A stretch of DNA of 63,641 bases, the filler included, from Octopus bimaculoides (taxonomy: Eukaryota): the NCBI RefSeq assembly GCF_001194135.2. It is 5 parts of 4 records of this genome, joined end to end, with 100 filler letters (N's around TTAATTAATTAA, not from the genome) between each part and the next. Parts side by side here need not be neighbours in the genome. Positions count along the whole stretch, not along the records: positions 49,014 to 63,641 come from NC_068985.1; 4 more parts are not named here. One strand, written 5' to 3'. Below are positions 51,237 through 63,641 of this stretch, piece by piece. Within the stretch, counting starts at the first letter, position 1, and every line of letters starts with the position of its first letter. The notes below the pieces were generated by a model. That model was not told where the DNA came from, searched no databases, and worked only from the letters and a program-made list of their open reading frames with translations. A program made the translations under genes and the position numbers.

Positions 51237-51378
51237 GTGAAGTATATTTGCCACTTAAATGCGGCTAAACCCTAAGGGTGAATGTTACTCTTGCTTTTAG
51301 CCCCAGAACATCTTCTCCAGCTGGCTATTGACACACATCTGTGCCCTGTCGGTATTTCCAAAGGGAAGTCATCCTTCC
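51237..51378. repeat. Direct repeat X, copy 1 (142 bp), at the LINE 3' side
   Basis: Matches 57528-57672 with four substitutions and one 3-nt indel. Confidence 0.95.
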
Positions 51379-51396
51379 TATCTTGATCACGTGATA

Positions 51397-51441
51397 CGCA
51401 CGGACTCGAGTTTCTGGGTATTTACCCTTCGTCAGCGTACG
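51397..51441 (-). ncRNA. Minimal type I hammerhead ribozyme motif at the LINE 3' end
   Basis: Minus strand reads CGUACG-CUGACGA-A-GGGU(AAAU)ACCC-A-GAA-ACUCGAGU-C-CGUGCG. All three stems pair, helix III is palindromic, GUC triplet. Confidence 0.8.
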
Positions 51442-51649
51442 ACAATCACCGATCTTCGATTAAATCTTTATTATGATCATTATGATCTAAATACAGAAAG
51501 GACAATACAGGACAAATAATACAAAAATGTTAATATGAGTTCGAATGAGGATAAAAATTAAATATATAATTAAATTTCGATAACTTTCAGCTAGAACTTT
51601 AAAACAAAGACTTAAATAAAGAAAAAGACACAAAGAAAGGAAAGAGAAT

Positions 51650-54600
51650 GCAAAGTTTAAAAGATCGAACCTGTTAGCTAATAAGACCCAGCAGCTAACT
51701 TTTCCTTTTATCAATGATGAAGCTGGGTTCCTGACACCTACCTTTCTCATCACACCCTTCCATCGTTTATCATATTCTTTTGGCTGCAGAGTCTTCCTCT
51801 CCGACCCCATCCTGCTTTTCAGATGATATCTGAAGTATGTAAGCAAACCGGGGCCAGAGACGAAGGACCCTGTCACTAATCGTTCCATTCTAGTCTTCCA
51901 AACACACTCTTTCAATACTGCAACCGTACAGTAAAAACATGCCTCACCTTCCTTTGAAAGTCCAGTTGGCGGTATCATCTTTATTATGGATTCAGCCGAT
52001 AGCTGTACTTGTCCCAGATGTGACAACACGTGTTCTATGTAAATTATCAAACTTGAAAGTTCCCGACAATGTACAAANNNNNNNNNNNNNNNNNNNNNNN
52101 NNNNNNNNNNNNNNNNNNNNNNNNNNNNNNNNNNNNNNNNNNNNNNNNNNNNNNNNNNNNNNNNNNNNNNNNNNNNNNNNNNNNCGAGATAACTTATCGC
52201 GAACAGGTAAAGCGTTCCTGTAACACTGCCAAGCCAGGGATTTTTGGTAATTATCCAAATACCCCGGCTTGAAGGTTTTCTTGAACAGGTTGGTAAGTTG
52301 GTTCTCATCGAACCCCAGAGCCCCTCCTAGGACGTCATCATTTTTTGCCTCTACCAGCCCTCTATAGAATACCGAGGTGGTATTTCCGCAGCCAGCTTTG
52401 CCCGCCTTGTGGATTAGCCCGAGTGCCTGTCAGCACTCCTTCTGCCATAATGTCGGATTTATTCTTTTGATGAGATTGGGTTCAAATGTTTCCAGCGAAG
52501 CCGGTCGCGGCATGAACTTCCCCACCAGCGGACTCCACACCTTATCACCCTCCAGGTGGTGCCAGAGATGTCTCAGCCTCAACGCATGTCTTCGCATCAT
52601 TAGCCAAGGCATCCCTAACCCACCCTTTAACGGTTCCTGGCAGCACACGGAGCACCTCACAAGTGGCTTCCCCCCCCTCCACAACACGCGGAAGAGGAGT
52701 CGTTCCAACTTGCTTAGCCAAAAATCGGGGCAAGGCAGCACGGACAGGCGGTAGGTGATTACCGATGCTATAAACACCTGCACCACCTCTGCTCTGCCCT
52801 TCAAGGACAGAGGCCTTCCGGACCACCTCTGTGCTATGGCCTCCACCTTTTCCACCACCTCGCTCCAATTCTTCTCCGTCTGGGAGTCCAGACCAAGCCA
52901 AACTCCAAGCAACTTAACAGGACCATCTGTCCAGTGTCCGACGACACTGGACAATATCGGCTTGTTCCTCCAGGTGCCAAGGCACAAACCGACCGACTTA
53001 TCCTTGTTAACTTTTGCTCCTGCCACCGCTTTGTATCGTCAGAGAGCAACTTCTACACGAGGTAGTTGTGCTTGGTTAGACACGATGAGGGTGACGTCGT
53101 CCGCGTAAGCAGAAGAGAATCTACCGCATCCAATCTCATCTGGGTTGCCACCTAACTTCTCTAGCCTCTGCAGTAATTGATCCAGGGCCAAAACATACAG
53201 AATCAGGGACAAGGGACACCCTTGACGAACTGAACGCTCGATCAAAAACGGCTCCGTTAGGTAACCATTTATCTGGACAGTGGACTTGATGCCGCTATAC
53301 ATAGCAGAGATCCAGCCGCNNNNNNNNNNNNNNNNNNNNNNNNNNNNNNNNNNNNNNNNNNNNNNNNNNNNNNNNNNNNNNNNNNNNNNNNNNNNNNNNN
53401 NNNNNNNNNNNNNNNNNNNNNNNNNNNNNNNNNNNNNNNNNNNNNNNNNNNNNNNNNNNNNNNNNNNNNNNNNNNNNNNNNNNNNNNNNNNNNNNNNNNN
53501 NNNNNNNNNNNNNNNNNNNNNNNNNNNNNNNNNNNNNNNNNNNNNNNNNNNNNNNNNNNNNNNNNNNNNNNNNNNNNNNNNNNNNNNNNNNNNNNNNNNN
53601 NNNNNNNNNNNNNNNNNNNNNNNNNNNNNNNNNNNNNNNNNNNNNNNNNNNNNNNNNNNNNNNNNNNNNNNNNNNNNNNNNNNNNNNNNNNNNNNNNNNN
53701 NNNNNNNNNNNNNNNNNNNNNNNNNNNNNNNNNNNNNNNNNNNNNNNNNNNNNNNNNNNNNNNNNNNNNNNNNNNNNNNNNNNNNNNNNNNNNNNNNNNN
53801 NNNNGGCCTCCCCACGCTCGAGCGGACCACTCTCCCCGAACAACCGAGCGAAATGCTGGTGAAAAGCCTTTTGCATCTCCTCCTGTCCATAGATCTTGCG
53901 TCCTCGTTCGTCGGTTAAAGACGTAATACAGGACTTCTTGCCCTTCTGACACTCCTCACGACGTGTCCATCTGGCTACGTTAATTCCTTCTCGTTTCCCT
54001 GCACGTAATTTCGCTCTGACTCTGCAACCTTCGTGCTTGGCATTGAGGTGATGATACAAGACCGTTCTCGCCGCTAACACTCTAGATGCGGAGCCAGATT
54101 CCAATGCCTTGTCTAAGTTCTTAACTAATTCACCCTCTACCCTAGACCTATCTAAACTTAGCTGTTTGCTAAATCTAATGGACTCTAAATGAATGGCTCT
54201 TTTGAGGGCGTGCCACCATCTATTATTAACGATGGTACCACATAATGCTCTCTGAACTAACTCCTTAATCCGGGCACGGAAAGCTTCACAAGTCAAAATA
54301 GACTTGTTCATTTTCCAGTACCCGGGTCCCTGTCTATGACACTTATCAACATGCACCTCACACGTCACAAGCTTGTGATCAGTGTAAGGTACAATACANN
54401 NNNNNNNNAGTAATAATAATAAGAGGAATAAACACAATGAAAATAAAGGAAATAAACCCCATAAGCATAACATAAGCAATTTAAAATTTTTTAAAAACGA
54501 TATTAGTAACCATGATGATAATAATAAGGATAATAAAGTCTGGTTCATAATCCCATTTGGGAGAAATATCAAGAGTAACCTGATAGCAAAGTTTAGAGAG

Positions 54601-55448
54601 GTGATAGGTAGGCACTTCCCAAGGAGCTCACACTATGGTAAAATTATCAATACGCACATAATTAGGTTTGGGTTTTCAAATACTAGGAACCTAGCACAAA
54701 TAATAGCAGCGCATAACCTTAAAATACCTAAGTCTAAAGAAATAGGGGGGAATGAGAATTTGAACAATGATATAAATAGCAATAATAATAATAATAGTAA
54801 TAATAATGATGATAATAATAATAATAATGGAGGTACTATTAATAATAGGGGTAAGGTCTGTAAGAGTAAGAACCTAATCACAGTAAATGAGGTAAACCCT
54901 AGGAGATTAAAATTTGAAGGACCCAACGCGAAAGTCAAAAATATAGTATATCAATGTAAGGTAAAGACCCAAACAGGCACCACGAAATACCTTGGTTGAA
55001 CATCTGGACAGGTATGTAGGAGAATATCTAATCACTTCACAACATTTAGAGATAGAAGGAAAATAGCAAGCACTAGTCTTAGCAAATACATCTGGGAACT
55101 CAAAGAAAATAATAAGCCGTATTCGTTAGAATGGTCCATAGTAGCAAGATCAATGCCATACAAGAGAGGAAGTACAACCAGCCTACCTTCTGGGTCCAGA
55201 AAGACAGTACTAACCTGTAAGTCCAAGTTCTTCCTGATAAGGACTGCCACGCCTGCACCTCTTCCTTGGCTAGGAGAAATAAATTTCTCGTAACCATTCA
55301 GAAGAGGCAAGAACGCTTGAGGTCCCTTCATCTTGGACTCGGTTACAATAGCAACATCTATTCTATGTGTTGTGAGGTCGTTCAGGAAACAAGCCTGTTT
55401 CCATCTCGACCCCATTCCACGTACATTTAAACAGCCTATCTTAATCAT
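51650..55448 (-). pseudogene. LINE ORF2 (AP endonuclease and reverse transcriptase), disrupted
   Basis: EN and RT motifs as above. Interrupted by the Penelope fragment at 54410-55169, a stop codon and frameshifts. The C-terminal boundary is approximate. Confidence 0.85.
54410..55169 (+). mobile_element. Penelope-like fragment nested antisense in the LINE endonuclease domain
   Basis: WFIIPFGRNIKSN..RHFP..GKIINTHIIRFGFSNTRNLAQIIAAHN, a poly-Asn (AAT)n tract, then IVYQCKV..KYLG*T..RISNHFTTF..LSKYIWELKENNKPYSLEWSIV (GIY-YIG). Confidence 0.88.
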
Positions 55449-55478
55449 CGAGAAAAGAAAGGTATTTACTTACAGTTG

Positions 55479-57141
55479 TTAGAGGGAGCATGATAGTTCG
55501 TGTCTGCCTGCTTCCTCAGCACTCCCTATAGCTGCTGGGCTTTTCACCGGCGTTGCCACCGGGCTCTGGGTTGGTGTAACTGCCGGGCTAATAACCAGCT
55601 TTCCAGATATCACCTCCTGGGTGACATCTTTAATTAAATGTTCTTTGACTACTTCTTGGAGGAGTTTTTCTCTCCATTCCTCCTCGCTGATTTTTGTGTA
55701 TCTCACTTCGCTGTCCGTAACTTTGAAAGTTTTAATTCGGTGGTGTGCCTTGATGAGGCGAACCACCTTCTCATTTTTGGCATTGAAAGCCACTATTTTG
55801 TCTGTGTTTTTAAGTCCTTTTAACNNNNNNNNNNNNNNNNNNNNNNNNNNNNNNNNNNNNNNNNNNNNNNNNNNNNNNNNNNNNNNNNNNNNNNNNNNNN
55901 NNNNNNNNNNNNNNNNNNNNNNNNNNNNNNNNNNNNNNNNNNNNNNNNNNNNNNNNNNNNNNNNNNNNNNNNNNNNNNNNNNNNNNNNNNNNNNNNNNNN
56001 NNNNNNNNNNNNNNNNNNNNNNNNNNNNNNNNNNNNNNNNNNNNNNNNNNNNNNNNNNNNNNNNNNNNNNNNNNNNNNNNNNNNNNNNNNNNNNNNNNNN
56101 NNNNNNNNNNNNNNNNNNNNNNNNNNNNNNNNNNNNNNNNNNNNNNNNNNNNNNNNNNNNNNNNNNNNNNNNNNNNNNNNNNNNNNNNNNNNNNNNNNNN
56201 NNNNNNNNNNNNNNNNNNNNNNNNNNNNNNNNNNNNNNNNNNNNNNNNNNNNNNNNNNNNNNNNNNNNNNNNNNNNNNNNNNNNNNNNNNNNNNNNNNNN
56301 NNNNNNNNNNNNNNNNNNNNNNNNNNNNNNNNNNNNNNNNNNNNNNNNNNNNNNNNNNNNNNNNNNNNNNNNNCAGACGGAGCGAACGTGGCCCTTCTGA
56401 CCGCACTTAAAGCATCTTGTCCTAGGTCCCTCCACCAATACACGAATAGTAAGCCCCTCCCCCACGAAGACTCTATCTGGTAAATTTTCTAGGGTCAAAT
56501 TATCTGCCTGAATGACCATTTCGACCTTTCCAATTCGTCGCCTCTTTCTTTCTCGTGCTCGATATCGTTAGTTTTCCCTCTACATCATAGATTATAGCAG
56601 TTGCTACCCACATAACATCGAATCCCTCGGGTATCTCTTCCACAGTAATTTTTGCCGTTCTGCGGCCTAAGTATGTAGACAGCAGCATTATCTGCGTGTT
56701 CTTTAATGTCTGAGTTGACACCTCCTTCACTAAGCTCTCCGACTCGAAGTGGGCTTCTATTATAGCGCTTCTCACTCCTCGGCTAACGTAGCGAATCTTG
56801 TTCCATATTGGTGACAAGCAACGTTCTACAATTTCATTTTTTACGTCTATTATTTTTTTTTCTTTTATGTTATAAACTTTATAAACTATGGGGTTTTTTC
56901 GTATGGCTTCGATAGTTTCAGGGGGCGGTACCAGTTTTGTCACTTCACCAGTTTTCTCTATTAAGTTTCTGAACTGGAAGAGTTTCTCCATTGCTACTTC
57001 TAGTTCAATTACGTTACCGCCTACGGCGTCTGAAAAACTTTGGTGCAACAACTTTTTTTCCTTCTCCCATCTCGGGAAAATCAGATTTTGAAGATAATTC
57101 AAATTCCATAATGAATACAAAGAACTTGTCACAAATGACAA
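55479..57141 (-). pseudogene. LINE ORF1 (nucleic-acid-binding, CCHC knuckle), frameshifted
   Basis: Two overlapping ORFs (56500-57141 and 55479-56519) join by a 1-nt shift. CX2CX4H motif next to the N gap. Confidence 0.8.
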
Positions 57142-57527
57142 GAAAAATAATCTTTCAAAATAACCTATAAAGGTTAACAGAAAACAGAAATTTTCTGCCC
57201 CAGAGGGCGAAAATAACTGTAAAACAGTTCACAAGAAAGTAGAAATTTTCTGCCCCGTAGGGTGAAAATAACTGTAAAACAGTTCACCAAAAAACAGTCC
57301 AAATAAATTATTCAACAAAAATATTAACAAATAAGTAACTAAAGAACAAACTCACATTAACAAGGGTAGCAACAATAAAGACGTAAAAGCCGATCTTCAA
57401 TGCGAAGGCATCCCAATGCAAATACCTATATACTTTTTCCAGTGACGAATATTCACTGATCTCAAAAAAGTGAAAACAAGCAATGTTAAATCTCTGAACG
57501 AGGTATAAACAGTAACTGCACGACAAT

Positions 57528-57672
57528 GTGAAGTATATTTGCCACTTAAATGTGGCTAAACCCTAAGGGTGAATGTTACTCTTGCTTTTAGCCCCAGGAG
57601 AACATCTCCTCCAGCTGGCTATTGACACACATCTGTGCCCTTTCGGTATTTGCAAAGGGAAGTCATCCTTCC
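57528..57672. repeat. Direct repeat X, copy 2 (145 bp), at the LINE 5' side
   Basis: Matches 51237-51378. No hammerhead precedes this copy on the minus strand. Confidence 0.95.
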
Positions 57673-57689
57673 CAGCAAAGGTGGAACAT

Positions 57690-60250
57690 TGCTATTGAGA
57701 GAAAAAGTGACTATGTTGAGAAGTTGGGATGTGATCCACAGAGGACCAGCTTCCTTTTGATGTATGATACATATTCCTGTGTTGCTAATTAAACTTGTCC
57801 TAAACAAAATGGCATTACTTTTTGACTTACCCTCGTAGATAGATATGATATTTTTTTTAGGCTAACAGGAAAAACAATTGCTTCTTATCAATCACAGGAG
57901 AAAGAAGCAGTAGGTTACACTGCAAGAACAAAGTAGAAGGAATGTTTGGCTCTATGGATATTCAGTGTGATATGATATCCTCACCTATTCTTTTCCCCAC
58001 TAGAAGGTACAACATGTATTGTGTGGCTTTACCTAAACCTCATCACTGATCTAAGCAGTTGTAAGTACTCTGCTTGGATGTCTTCACTCACACTAGAATA
58101 TGGCACTCTAAAGCACTAACTTCTCTACCTGGCCTGATGGATGCTACATGTTGCACCAGAATATACCTCCATCTGGGAGGTATGTCCTCTTTTGGTTGTA
58201 GTTTGATTGTTCAATGGCATCTTTCTATGATTCCATTTCTACTTAGCCTGTATGTAGTTTTAAAATACAAATTCCAGTTATCCACCATCTCTCTCAGTGA
58301 CCCTGAACAAAACACTACTTTTATCTATCAGCATCTCAATAACTCGGCCCCTCTCCAAAACTTTTGTTCTGAAGTCTAATAATTTCAACTGCAGCCTCTG
58401 CTCTAATCTCCCTCTGTATAACTACTTGTCTATAACTGCAATCAGGATGAGCTACAACCTTTGGATGCATTACATCTACTGCCAACCACTTCCAATAACT
58501 TCTCACTCATGTCTCTCCCCTTTCATGCACACTTGGTTGATTGACTGACACCTGTCCCAACTTCTAACCACCTTCCAAACACTCTCCCTTGTAACATCAG
58601 GGTTAACACTTCTGGTCAAAAATATTGTTCTAATCATCCCTATATGATACACGTCATGGTTTCTCTTTAGCTTCAGATCCTCCAGATTTTCCAATCAGCA
58701 CTCTGGATTCAGTACCCTCTCTAAATCCTCTGGCACCCCATCCACATTTTCCTCACCCCAGTAAGGGCATCTTCAGTTTTCTCTGAAAGTACAAGTATTA
58801 TTCACAGCTGCAGGTTAAATTCTTTGATTAACTCTCCTAGGATCCCCAGGCATTGTTTTACAATCATCTCTATCGCTCTGTTCAGATTCTCTTCTCATAG
58901 GTAAATTAGGGATCTCACTCACCCAAGTACAGTTTAGATTTGGAACCCTGTCTAAACTAAATTTATTCCCTTCAACATGGCATCCAGTTTAACTACATTT
59001 TCTTAGCTAAGCTGCATCCTCTGTCACAACTTCACTTATTTCTAGGACAATCCCCATTGATATGCTACTAGCATCACACCATACAAGACCTCTCTCTGAC
59101 TTAGACAGTTAGGTCATCGTTGAATAGGAGTAGACATCTTTAGTATGTTGTTTACAGCTGTGTGTTATTCCATATAAAGACATAACCATTGTTGTTTAAA
59201 TACATATTTATTCTTATTGATTTAATGTACAATATTTACATGTATACATAAAAATTTTTGTAGGTTTTTGCAATATACTTCTGTATATTGCAGGAATAGT
59301 GTTTGTTCATCATAATTGAAGAACTCCTTTCTACTCCAGGCTGAGTTTCAGGAAAGGAAAACTTGACATTATAAAAGCTAGTTGCTCACTGGCTTGTTTT
59401 TGGTAAGAAGTGAGAATATGTGTTCTCTGGTGGCTTTTATAACCACACAAAGTGTGGGAACTTCTAAAAACTCATGGAATGTTTTACTGTATGGCATGAT
59501 ATTTCTGCTAGCTGATTGGTCAGTTATCAGGGAACATCATCTGACTCAAGTGTGGACTGGAACCAGCTACCAGGTTTGCAAGGTTTTAATTCTAGGTCTT
59601 GCTACAGACGCATACCAAATTTCTTCTCACTGGATCCTCCTTTCTAACCCTCTCCAAGATATCTTTCTTCATTACAACTGTTCTCTTTCCAACTTTCTGT
59701 CTTCAACTGACTCCAGCTGTTCTCCTCTTCACACAGCTACATGTTGTTCAGAGTTACCCAACAATAGGGTAATAGCACACTAGTTATCTGCACATTTGGA
59801 AACAGACCTCAATTACTCAAATCATCCTTCAAGTCCAGACTTTCATTTTCTCTCTGAAACACCAGCTCATCTGACCTATCTCCCCTCAGCCTCACTCCCA
59901 CTATAGATTCTAGTTGTTTTGCAACCTACCTGAACCTCTTCAGATTATCCATCACTTTTGCTGTTGTCACCATTGCCTTGTCCACCAAGATGTCATCTAT
60001 GTAGGAGTTAGGAACTCCTTTCAGTCTGTCCACCTTTCCCAGTATCATCTTGAGAATTGTGACTATGATCTTTGACACAGTTCAGTTGAAATTCGAACAG
60101 GGTCAAGCAGTACATCTTACCTCCTGAACTTCACCAGCTATTATTTCCACAACGTTTTGTCCACATGAAGCTGTAGATTGGCTGACTTCAAATCTATAAT
60201 TGTAGAAACCCCTCTCATCTGCCTCCACTCTCTAAAGGTCTACCTACATA
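57690..60250 (-). mobile_element. Old, heavily degenerate RTE-like LINE
   Basis: Scattered stop-ridden RT and endonuclease remnants on the minus strand, including a GC(S)SS.L-like QGC motif relic near 58430-58460. Boundaries are approximate. Confidence 0.45.
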
Positions 60251-63334: not shown

Positions 63335-63641
63335 CATATAATGACACCTGCACATTAGCCAGTCCGGCGGCACTGGCAATGAACTCGCTCGAATGTCTTT
63401 ACACGTGCCAAGAAGGCGACGCTGGGCACAGGTGCCACCACGATTTCGCTTTCGCTTGCCCTGACAGGTCTTCGCAAGCCGAGTTTTGTATCCAATGAAG
63501 GAGACTACGTTGGCATGGGTGCCAGTCGTCGAATTTAGTTCAATTTCGATTTCACTTGCCTCAGCAGGTCTTCGCAAGCGGAGTTTAGTGTCCAATGAAG
63601 GAAAGGTACGCATAAGTGGGCTGGCTACACCCCTGGAAGAG
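63335..63641 (-). mobile_element. Family A-related retroposon, 5' region; homologous to 57-360
   Basis: Shares CACGATTTC..CACTTGCCC..CAGGTCTTC.CAAGC.GAGTTT.GTGTCC and GTCGAATTTAGTTC with the start of the window. Confidence 0.75.

What the first reader, a model, noticed from the sequence alone, without database searches (positions are those of the whole stretch)
51237..57672. Tx1/L1-type LINE enclosed by ~142-bp direct repeats with a hammerhead ribozyme at its 3' junction
Seen in sequence (minus strand): X - ATTGTCGTGC - 5'UTR/ORF1/ORF2/3'UTR with AATAAA - ATTGTCGTAC-G-hammerhead - 17 nt - X. The two X copies differ by four substitutions and a 3-nt indel. Established: L1/Tx1 LINEs normally have short TSDs and no long terminal repeats, many Tx1 families are target-sequence specific, and minimal type I hammerheads with terminal redundancy are typical of Penelope pseudo-LTRs and retrozymes. 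Model A (inference): the LINE inserted, with a 10-bp TSD, into an X-hammerhead-X tandem just before the catalytic core, and may target such repeats specifically. Model B (inference): X and the hammerhead belong to the LINE, giving a chimeric, terminally redundant, ribozyme-processed LINE.
Basis: partly seen in the sequence, partly recalled or inferred. Interest (0 to 1): 0.88.

Follow-up and report, generated by a model that had tools for sequence, protein, structure and literature searches.

The report
Decayed LINE nested in hammerhead repeat
An old, broken L1-type jumping gene sits inside a short piece of a roughly 210-bp repeat that carries a hammerhead ribozyme motif; this is most likely an ordinary transposon-in-transposon insertion, not a new ribozyme-processed LINE.

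Summary
Two direct repeats, X1 (57528-57672) and X2 (51237-51378), differ by four substitutions and a 3-nt indel. On the minus strand they bracket ATTGTCGTGC, an L1-superfamily LINE, ATTGTCGTAC, G, a type I hammerhead-like motif (51441-51397) and a 24-nt spacer.

The hammerhead has a perfect core, a 6-bp helix I, a 4-bp helix II and a palindromic helix III (ACUCGAGU), the dimer-type form seen in metazoan repeats. It scores 19.6 bits against an Rfam threshold of 34 and has extra A residues beside helix II.

With the LINE and one 10-mer removed, what is left is 1.7 copies of a 210-213-bp hammerhead-bearing unit. That is the layout of animal non-LTR retrozymes and Penelope-derived repeats.

The LINE is dead: in-frame stops, a frameshift, 125 endonuclease residues replaced by foreign DNA, and four gaps. 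Its pieces stay collinear with a 60%-identical relative.

Three relatives have the same 3'UTR end (AATAAA.GAAATC) followed by (ATT)n and no hammerhead. The ribozyme therefore lies outside the LINE body, which weakens model B.

No other copy of X, of the hammerhead unit or of this LINE family could be retrieved, so target specificity is untested. Best reading: a one-off nested insertion. Interest is low to moderate.

The parts
57528..57672 (-). X1, upstream copy of the direct repeat (145 nt); read here as the 3' part of a truncated repeat unit
   Evidence: four substitutions and a 3-nt indel relative to X2
57518..57527 (-). 5' copy of the putative target-site duplication, ATTGTCGTGC
51447..57517 (-). 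Decayed L1-superfamily LINE. 5'UTR 57517-56992, with two 55-nt tandem repeats at 57179-57288. ORF1 runs from 56991 and has a CCHC knuckle near 56400. ORF2 runs from 55448 to about 51724. 3'UTR runs to 51447, with AATAAA at about 51472-51467.
   Evidence: Pfam. PDB L1 ORF2p. Homologues with RVT_1 and zf-RVT. Collinearity with L014 ORF2, and with ORF1. 3'UTR-end homology. Two in-frame stops in the RT segment.
54409..55169 (+). Foreign AT-rich block that replaces about 125 endonuclease residues. On the + strand it encodes a fragment that looks GIY-YIG-like by eye and contains an Asn-rich tract. A 10-N gap (54399-54408) borders it.
   Evidence: No Pfam hit. One weak homologue, P0122.
51437..51446 (-). 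3' copy of the putative target-site duplication, ATTGTCGTAC; its last five bases form part of the 5' strand of hammerhead helix I
51397..51441 (-). Type I hammerhead-like motif. Helix I is CGUACG/CGUGCG. The core is CUGACGA...GAAA. Helix II is GGGU/ACCC with loop AAAU and is flanked by A residues. Helix III is the palindrome ACUCGAGU. Predicted cleavage is after C at 51403.
   Evidence: Rfam RF00163, 19.6 bits. Descriptor test. Fold of the reconstructed monomer forms helices I and II.
51379..51402 (-). 24 nt between the predicted cleavage site and X2; the first 6 nt are the 3' strand of helix I, and the stretch contains the palindrome ATCACGTGAT
51237..51378 (-). X2, downstream copy of the direct repeat (142 nt). 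Together with 51379-51446 it makes one 210-nt unit with 46% GC.
57678..57850 (+). Context: the 3' remnant of a mariner-like transposon (last codons of the transposase, ...RWNIAIERKSDYVEK, plus the terminal inverted repeat). It abuts X1 with 5 nt between them.
   Evidence: 93% DNA identity to ENA contig L003 over 57678-57776. The homology stops at the edge of X.

Best explanation
Two unrelated retroelements are nested.

Step 1 (inferred). A short hammerhead-bearing repeat entered this site next to a mariner remnant, or was amplified there. Its unit is X plus 68 nt, 210-213 bp, 46% GC. About 1.7 units are present (X-Y-X), so there is only one ribozyme. This is the partial-tandem layout typical of animal non-LTR retrozymes and Penelope-derived repeats.

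Step 2 (the junctions are shown, the mechanism is inferred). An L1-superfamily LINE with an AP-endonuclease inserted by target-primed reverse transcription 11 nt upstream of the CUGA core, in the same orientation as the ribozyme. It duplicated ATTGTCGTRC. The leading ATT may be microhomology with an (AUU)n RNA tail, which relatives of this LINE carry.

Step 3 (shown). Both elements then decayed. The X copies differ by about 4% and the 10-mers by one base. The LINE acquired stops, a frameshift and a foreign block in its endonuclease domain.

On this reading the hammerhead is not part of the LINE, and its position at the 3' junction is incidental. A read-through LINE transcript would carry a single dimer-type hammerhead, and such motifs cleave poorly on their own.
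For: X repeats and both junctions.

The 10-mer flanks the LINE exactly and is about 1% likely by chance in the 3' zone.

LINE identity.

The homologous 3' end of the LINE body maps to about 51458. In relatives L012, L014 and L015 it is followed by (ATT)n, with no hammerhead by Rfam.

The hammerhead has a complete core, a 6-bp helix I, a 4-bp helix II, a palindromic helix III and an unpaired base between A9 and helix II. These features are described for metazoan and Penelope hammerheads in PMC4209133. Rfam match. Descriptor test.

Unit length and GC lie within the 170-400 nt and <50% ranges reported for animal retrozymes, including 220-240-bp units in a coral (PMC7229834).

Partial tandems are the rule for Penelope-like elements (PMC11167929), and retrozymes are proposed to derive from them (bioRxiv 10.64898/2026.07.22.740005).

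A genome that shares the 93%-identical mariner also carries tandem hammerhead units with a palindromic helix III (L010).

The LINE UTRs show no similarity to the unit.
Against: Only one locus is available. No second copy of X, Y or this LINE family was found in any searchable collection. That X-Y is a repeat family is therefore inferred from its architecture, not shown.

The hammerhead is below the Rfam gathering score and has an extra A between C11.1 and G12, so it may be inactive or, less likely, a chance motif.

No target-site duplication flanks X-Y-X itself, and the adjoining mariner is truncated at the junction without explanation.

The two LINE junctions are joined only through four scaffold gaps.

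The LINE and the ribozyme share an orientation, and the insertion leaves helix I intact. That also fits a targeted or functional association.
Confidence: 0.62

Rival explanations
1. Targeted insertion (the second clause of the reader's model A). The LINE family recognises this hammerhead repeat and always inserts at ATTGTCGTAC in one orientation, as Tx1-clade elements do with other repeats. It may also gain a defined 3' end from the downstream ribozyme.
For: Many Tx1-clade LINEs prefer particular repeats, including DNA transposons and satellites (PMC4494074). The orientation is the same as the ribozyme's. The insertion preserves helix I. The target region is small, so a random hit on it needs the repeat to be abundant.
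Against: There is one copy only. The three closest relatives end in (ATT)n, not in hammerhead repeats. Tx1-clade membership was not established. The LINE 3' end shows no similarity to the unit.
Confidence: 0.12
2. Model B. X and the hammerhead are integral parts of a terminally redundant, ribozyme-processed LINE, organised like a Penelope pseudo-LTR.
For: The layout X-body-HHR-X resembles pLTR-ORF-pLTR with a hammerhead in the repeat (PMC4209133; PMC11167929).
Against: The enclosed ORFs are an AP-endonuclease and an L1-like RT, not a Penelope RT with GIY-YIG. Relatives at 60% identity share the 3'UTR end but have no hammerhead after it. The internal 10-bp repeat that exactly flanks the LINE body has no role in this model.
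Confidence: 0.04
3. X is not a repeat family but a 142-bp duplication of local target DNA, made when Y, or the LINE plus Y, inserted. It would be an unusually long target-site duplication or a local segmental duplication.
For: X1 abuts a mariner remnant. A few landmarks in X (G.H....RW) seem to continue the mariner reading frame by eye.
Against: X shows no significant DNA similarity to the mariner sequence upstream of the breakpoint in L003 (412 of 1000 shuffles score as well). PDB and Pfam searches gave nothing. No mariner sequence or inverted repeat lies on the flank B side. A 142-bp duplication is far outside the usual range for LINEs. The 10-mer would still need a second event.
Confidence: 0.08
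4. Scaffolding artefact. The 5' half (flank-X1-10-mer-LINE 5' part) and the 3' half (LINE 3' part-10-mer-Y-X2-flank) come from different loci or haplotypes and were joined across N gaps.
For: Four gaps lie inside the LINE. The contig with the 5' part runs into foreign sequence at 55169 and is joined by a 10-N gap. Reading frames differ across every gap.
Against: All four ORF2 pieces are collinear and non-overlapping with one relative. The missing stretches (about 600 nt and about 66 nt) are of the same order as the gap estimates of 485 and 107 N.
Confidence: 0.06
5. The hammerhead is a chance look-alike or a dead relic with no ribozyme history at this locus, and X-Y-X is simply a local duplication.
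For: The Rfam score of 19.6 bits is below the gathering score of 34, and the match was not reported at E<=1 in the 14.6-kb scan. An extra A lies on the 3' side of helix II. The monomer fold z-score is only -1.6.
Against: The core is complete and all three helices are in register. Expectation is 6.7e-4 per piece. The architecture matches the published metazoan type in five respects. The motif sits in a repeat of retrozyme-like length.
Confidence: 0.08

Closest known systems
Animal non-LTR retrozymes (Cervera and de la Pena 2020, PMC7229834), now proposed to be non-autonomous derivatives of Penelope-like elements (bioRxiv 10.64898/2026.07.22.740005)
   Same: A type I hammerhead sits inside a short, low-GC unit arranged head to tail. 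The unit is 210-213 bp, against 170-400 bp reported overall and 220-240 bp in a coral. Helix I has 6 bp, helix II has 4 bp, and helix III is short and palindromic.
   Different: Only 1.7 units and one ribozyme are present here. Copy number, expression and circular RNA are unknown. The motif has an extra A between C11.1 and G12 and is below the Rfam threshold.
Hammerheads in Penelope-like element pseudo-LTRs (Cervera and de la Pena 2014, PMC4209133)
   Same: Terminal direct repeats arise from partial tandems. There is an unpaired nucleotide between A9 and helix II. Helix III is palindromic, which implies action as a dimer.
   Different: The ORFs between the repeats are an AP-endonuclease and an L1-like RT, not a telomerase-like RT with GIY-YIG. 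Helix II here has 4 bp, against 6-8 bp in the minimal Penelope hammerheads.
Tx1-clade LINEs with preferred targets: Tx1L in Tx1D, Tx1-Mar in Mariner-N4, Keno, Kibi and Koshi (Kojima 2015, PMC4494074)
   Same: An L1-superfamily LINE with a CCHC ORF1 sits precisely inside another repeat, with a short target-site duplication. Relatives end in a microsatellite.
   Different: Neither clade membership nor any target preference could be shown. There is a single copy.
LINEs with terminal ribozymes: the R2, RTE and L1Tc HDV-like 5' ribozymes (from my own knowledge, not checked here)
   Same: A self-cleaving RNA motif lies at the border of a non-LTR element and could trim a co-transcript.
   Different: Those ribozymes belong to the element, sit at its 5' end and are conserved across copies. 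Here the ribozyme is a hammerhead, lies 3' of the element and outside its homologous body, and is absent from relatives.

Membership tests
Hammerhead ribozyme, type I (Rfam RF00163) | Conserved core C3-U4-G5-A6-N7-G8-A9 ... G12-A13-A14 ... U16.1-H17 | tested here: met
   CUGACGA, GAAA and GUC are all present in the right order and spacing.
Hammerhead ribozyme, type I (Rfam RF00163) | Three helices in register around the core, with helix I open | tested here: met
   Helix I is CGUACG/CGUGCG (6 bp, one G-U). Helix II is GGGU/ACCC. Helix III is the 8-nt palindrome ACUCGAGU.
Hammerhead ribozyme, type I (Rfam RF00163) | Score at or above the curated gathering threshold | tested here: not met
   19.6 bits against 34. 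A tandem hammerhead in the related genome scores 33.2 bits.
Hammerhead ribozyme, type I (Rfam RF00163) | G10.1-C11.1 pair stacked directly on the core | tested here: inconclusive
   An A lies between A9 and G10.1, a known variant (PMC4209133). A second A lies between C11.1 and G12, which I did not find described.
Hammerhead ribozyme, type I (Rfam RF00163) | Self-cleavage after H17 | not testable with these tools
   This needs in vitro transcription of monomeric and dimeric constructs.
Animal non-LTR retrozyme | Type I hammerhead within head-to-tail units of about 170-400 bp with GC below 50% | tested here: met
   After removal of the LINE and one 10-mer, X-Y-X is 1.7 units of 210-213 bp with 46% GC (criteria from PMC7229834).
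Animal non-LTR retrozyme | Multicopy family dispersed in the genome | not testable with these tools
   The source genome is not searchable. X and the hammerhead pattern were absent from JGI metagenomes, GTDB genomes and IMG/VR.
Animal non-LTR retrozyme | Expressed as linear and circular monomer RNAs | not testable with these tools
   No transcript data are available. This locus has only one cleavage site.
Penelope-like element | ORF encoding a telomerase-like RT with a GIY-YIG endonuclease between the pseudo-LTRs | tested here: not met
   The ORFs between the X copies are Exo_endo_phos and RVT_1, and they are closest to L1 ORF2p.
L1-superfamily (L1/Tx1) LINE | ORF2 with an N-terminal AP-endonuclease, an RT and a C-terminal zinc-binding region; ORF1 upstream | tested here: met
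   Pfam Exo_endo_phos (weak) and RVT_1, and a CCHC in ORF1. The window pieces are collinear with L014 ORF2, which carries PF03372, PF00078 and PF13966. The best PDB match is L1 ORF2p at 4e-17, against 8e-6 for R2.
L1-superfamily (L1/Tx1) LINE | Short target-site duplication at both ends | tested here: met
   ATTGTCGTGC and ATTGTCGTAC flank the element exactly. The 3' boundary is supported to within 11 nt by homology with relatives.
Tx1 clade specifically | Placement within the Tx1 clade in an RT phylogeny with reference elements | not tested
   No labelled reference LINE sequences were available in the tools.
Tx1 clade specifically | Target-sequence preference across independent copies | not testable with these tools
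   There is a single copy. Relatives show only (ATT)n at the 3' side.

The most novel reading that the evidence does not exclude
This LINE lineage homes to hammerhead-bearing retrozyme repeats, inserting just upstream of the catalytic core in the sense orientation. Read-through transcripts would then be trimmed by the host repeat's ribozyme. That would be a LINE borrowing a hammerhead for 3'-end formation, in the way R2 uses an HDV-like ribozyme at its 5' end.
Probability: 0.08. Interest if true: 0.7.

Novelty: new member of a known kind. Interest (0 to 1): 0.25.

Why it matters
If the nested-insertion reading is right, the locus is a routine example of transposons piling up. It adds one more hammerhead-bearing short repeat and one more L1-superfamily family to the catalogue.

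It would matter only if genome-wide data showed either of two things: that the LINE repeatedly sits at the same position of these units, or that it always carries the ribozyme. Either result would link AP-endonuclease LINEs to hammerhead and retrozyme biology, a link so far made only for Penelope-like elements. It would also bear on the open question of which machinery mobilises animal retrozymes.

Tried and rejected
1. X as part of the adjoining mariner, which would make X a long target duplication. By eye, X seemed to continue the transposase C-terminus. No test supported this:
- Pfam gave nothing.
- PDB searches, whose database includes mariner transposase entries, gave nothing.
- The one database relative (P0121 on L003) is 93% identical only from 57678 onward.
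- X has no significant DNA similarity to the L003 sequence upstream of that point.
- No matching inverted repeat lies on the other flank.

2. Finding other copies:
- A hammerhead pattern scan of JGI metagenomes returned five chance hits without a helix II.
- A 22-mer from X was absent from GTDB genomes and IMG/VR.
- A relative-protein scan of GTDB genomes found nothing.
- The protein database holds no LINE closer than 60% identity.

3. LINE-SINE tail sharing. The LINE UTRs show no similarity to the unit on either strand.

4. A tRNA-like head in the unit. ARAGORN found none.

5. ORF1 collinearity with distant relatives failed but worked with L014.

6. Sequence-string searches of the literature and a 'hammerhead ribozyme' plus 'Tx1' search found nothing relevant.

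7. The foreign block in the endonuclease domain has no Pfam hit and only one weak homologue.

Full report
**Observation**

The repeat finder returns the two X copies as two adjoining families because of a 3-nt indel. A global alignment gives 145 nt against 142 nt, with four substitutions and one 3-nt indel.

Directly 3' of X1 lies ATTGTCGTGC (57527-57518). The same 10-mer with one transition, ATTGTCGTAC, lies at 51446-51437. Between them is a LINE.

After the second 10-mer come:
- G;
- CUGACGA;
- a 14-nt helix II segment;
- GAAA;
- CUCGAG;
- UC, with C17 at 51403;
- 24 nt;
- X2.

**Gaps, tested first as requested**

A tblastn search with the ORF2 of the closest full-length relative (L014, about 60% identity in the RT) maps four window pieces in one order and orientation:

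| Relative ORF2 residues | Window coordinates |
|---|---|
| 3-67 | 55361-55170 |
| 193-387 | 54392-53808 |
| 587-965 | 53317-52184 |
| 988-1105 | 52077-51724 |

- The 485-N gap hides residues 388-586, so about 600 nt are expected there.
- The 107-N gap hides residues 966-987, so about 66 nt are expected there.
- Both gap lengths are therefore only rough. The frame changes across the gaps (-3, -1, -2) carry no information.
- Residues 68-192 are not hidden in a gap. They are replaced by a 761-nt AT-rich foreign block (54409-55169) that ends at the 10-N gap.
- ORF1 is homologous to the relative up to its CCHC knuckle (56694-56382) and has a frameshift. The 549-N gap follows the knuckle. Collinearity across that gap can be judged only from order: the knuckle lies before it and the ORF2 start after it.
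- The pieces fit one LINE, but the physical link between the 5' and 3' junctions rests on scaffolding.

**The LINE**

- Pfam finds RVT_1, a weak Exo_endo_phos match and a CCHC knuckle.
- The RT is far closer to human L1 ORF2p (4e-17) than to R2 (8e-6) among solved structures.
- Homologues carry zf-RVT.
- This places it in the L1 superfamily. I could not resolve Tx1 against L1.
- The copy is dead. The RT segment has two in-frame stops, ORF1 has a frameshift, and the endonuclease domain is interrupted.

**The hammerhead**

Rfam RF00163 aligns over its full model, but at 19.6 bits against a gathering score of 34. E is 0.014 in a 141-nt search, and the match is absent at E<=1 in the whole-piece scan.

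A structural descriptor that I wrote after seeing the motif finds only this site. It requires the core, 4 bp in helix II, a palindromic or hairpin helix III, and 6 bp in helix I. Expectation is 6.7e-4 per simulated piece.

The architecture matches the published description of metazoan type I hammerheads (PMC4209133):
- helix I of 6 bp;
- helix II of 4 bp;
- a short helix III with a palindromic loop, which implies action as a dimer;
- an unpaired base between A9 and helix II.

The unusual point is a second A between C11.1 and G12. Activity is therefore uncertain. Single dimer-type motifs are in any case poor self-cleavers.

**What X-Y-X is**

With the LINE and one 10-mer removed, the remainder is X (145 nt), Y (68 nt) and X (142 nt). 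That is 1.7 head-to-tail copies of a 210-213-bp unit with 46% GC and one hammerhead.

In any partial tandem the overlapping part appears as a 'terminal repeat'. The edges of X therefore need not be element ends.

The size, the GC content, the ribozyme type and the partial-tandem layout are those of animal non-LTR retrozymes (PMC7229834). They also fit the partial tandems of Penelope-like elements (PMC11167929), from which retrozymes are now proposed to derive.

The reconstructed monomer folds with helix I closing the X region and with the helix II hairpin formed, but the z-score is only -1.6.

A genome that shares a 93%-identical mariner with this window (ENA ERZ21867824) carries units about 401 nt apart, each with a hammerhead that has a palindromic helix III (L010, 33.2 bits). 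Such repeats therefore exist in a genome that shares this transposon.

**Is the ribozyme part of the LINE?**

Three contigs of the closest relatives (L012, L014, L015) share a recognisable 3'UTR end with the window...TGTATTGTCCT...GGCCAATAAA.GAAATC. In all three it is followed directly by (ATT)n. Rfam finds no hammerhead in them.

In the window the homologous end (AATAAAGATTTAATC) is at about 51458. It is followed by 11 nt, then by the 10-mer, which begins with ATT. The hammerhead therefore lies outside the conserved LINE body.

The 10-mer exactly flanks that body. This is what a target-site duplication predicts, and model B does not explain it.

A chance second 10-mer is not rare in the piece as a whole (0.41 expected). 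It is about 1% likely within the 320-nt zone where it is found.

**Surroundings**

Flank A from 57678 is the 3' end of a mariner-like transposon: the last codons of the transposase plus the inverted repeat. It is 93% identical to L003. The homology stops 5 nt from X1.

I suspected that X continues the mariner, which would have made X a 142-bp target duplication. Every test was negative. No target-site duplication flanks X-Y-X, and the mariner's truncation at this junction is unexplained.

**What could not be done**

No second copy of X, of Y or of this LINE family exists in the searchable collections. The relatives that end in (ATT)n are a different family and are only suggestive.

**Verdict**

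- The first half of model A, a nested insertion, is the best explanation (about 0.6).
- Target specificity (about 0.1) and model B (about 0.04) are not excluded.
- Both components belong to known kinds, and their juxtaposition is most likely incidental.
- Interest is 0.25. It would rise to about 0.7 only if genome-wide data showed a recurrent LINE-hammerhead association.

Noticed in passing
window 54409-55169 (+ strand): A 761-nt AT-rich block replaces about 125 residues of the LINE endonuclease. On the + strand it encodes a fragment that looks GIY-YIG-like by eye (NIVYQCKV...KYLG...SKYIWELKENNKPYSLEWSI) and is interrupted by an Asn-rich tract. It has no Pfam hit and only one weak database homologue (P0122). 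A 10-N gap borders it, so a scaffolding misjoin is possible.
   Followed up: partly
window 57678-57850 (+ strand): The 3' remnant of a mariner-like transposon (RWNIAIERKSDYVEKLGCDPQRTSF plus a terminal inverted repeat ending in TA). It is 93% identical to ENA contig ctg81796l (L003 523-621). It is truncated exactly where X1 begins, and no 5' half was found in the piece.
   Followed up: yes
window 49014-49412 (- strand): An RVT_1 fragment of a second, unrelated non-LTR retrotransposon (FYMDDLKLY motif), cut by the edge of the piece.
   Followed up: no
window 57179-57288: Two tandem 55-nt repeats (89% identical) inside the LINE 5'UTR.
   Followed up: no
window 49738-50513: Diverged direct repeats (70-79% identity) spaced about 530-570 bp apart in flank B. 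They may be two copies of another repeat.
   Followed up: no
window 63443-63602: Two 60-nt copies (85% identical) spaced 100 bp apart at the end of the piece. This may be the start of a tandem array.
   Followed up: no
L010 9400-9940 (- strand): In the ENA genome that shares the mariner, two units about 401 nt apart each carry sequences that look by eye like tRNA gene promoter boxes, followed by a type I hammerhead with helix III ACAGCUGU. One hammerhead scores 33.2 bits; the other has a mutated core (CUGAUGG). The units resemble schistosome Sm-alpha SINE-like repeats. ARAGORN found no tRNA.
   Followed up: partly
L012 2024-2105, L014 5157-5226, L015 3870-3877: The closest LINE relatives all end in AATAAA.GAAA(TC/CG) followed by (ATT)n. 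This is either a microsatellite tail or a microsatellite target, as in the Tx1-clade Kibi and Koshi elements.
   Followed up: partly
L011 10026-10146 (- strand): A full-length 5S rRNA gene (44 bits, above the Rfam threshold) lies 2.3 kb downstream of a distant relative of the LINE. It is not adjacent, so there is no evidence of 5S targeting.
   Followed up: no
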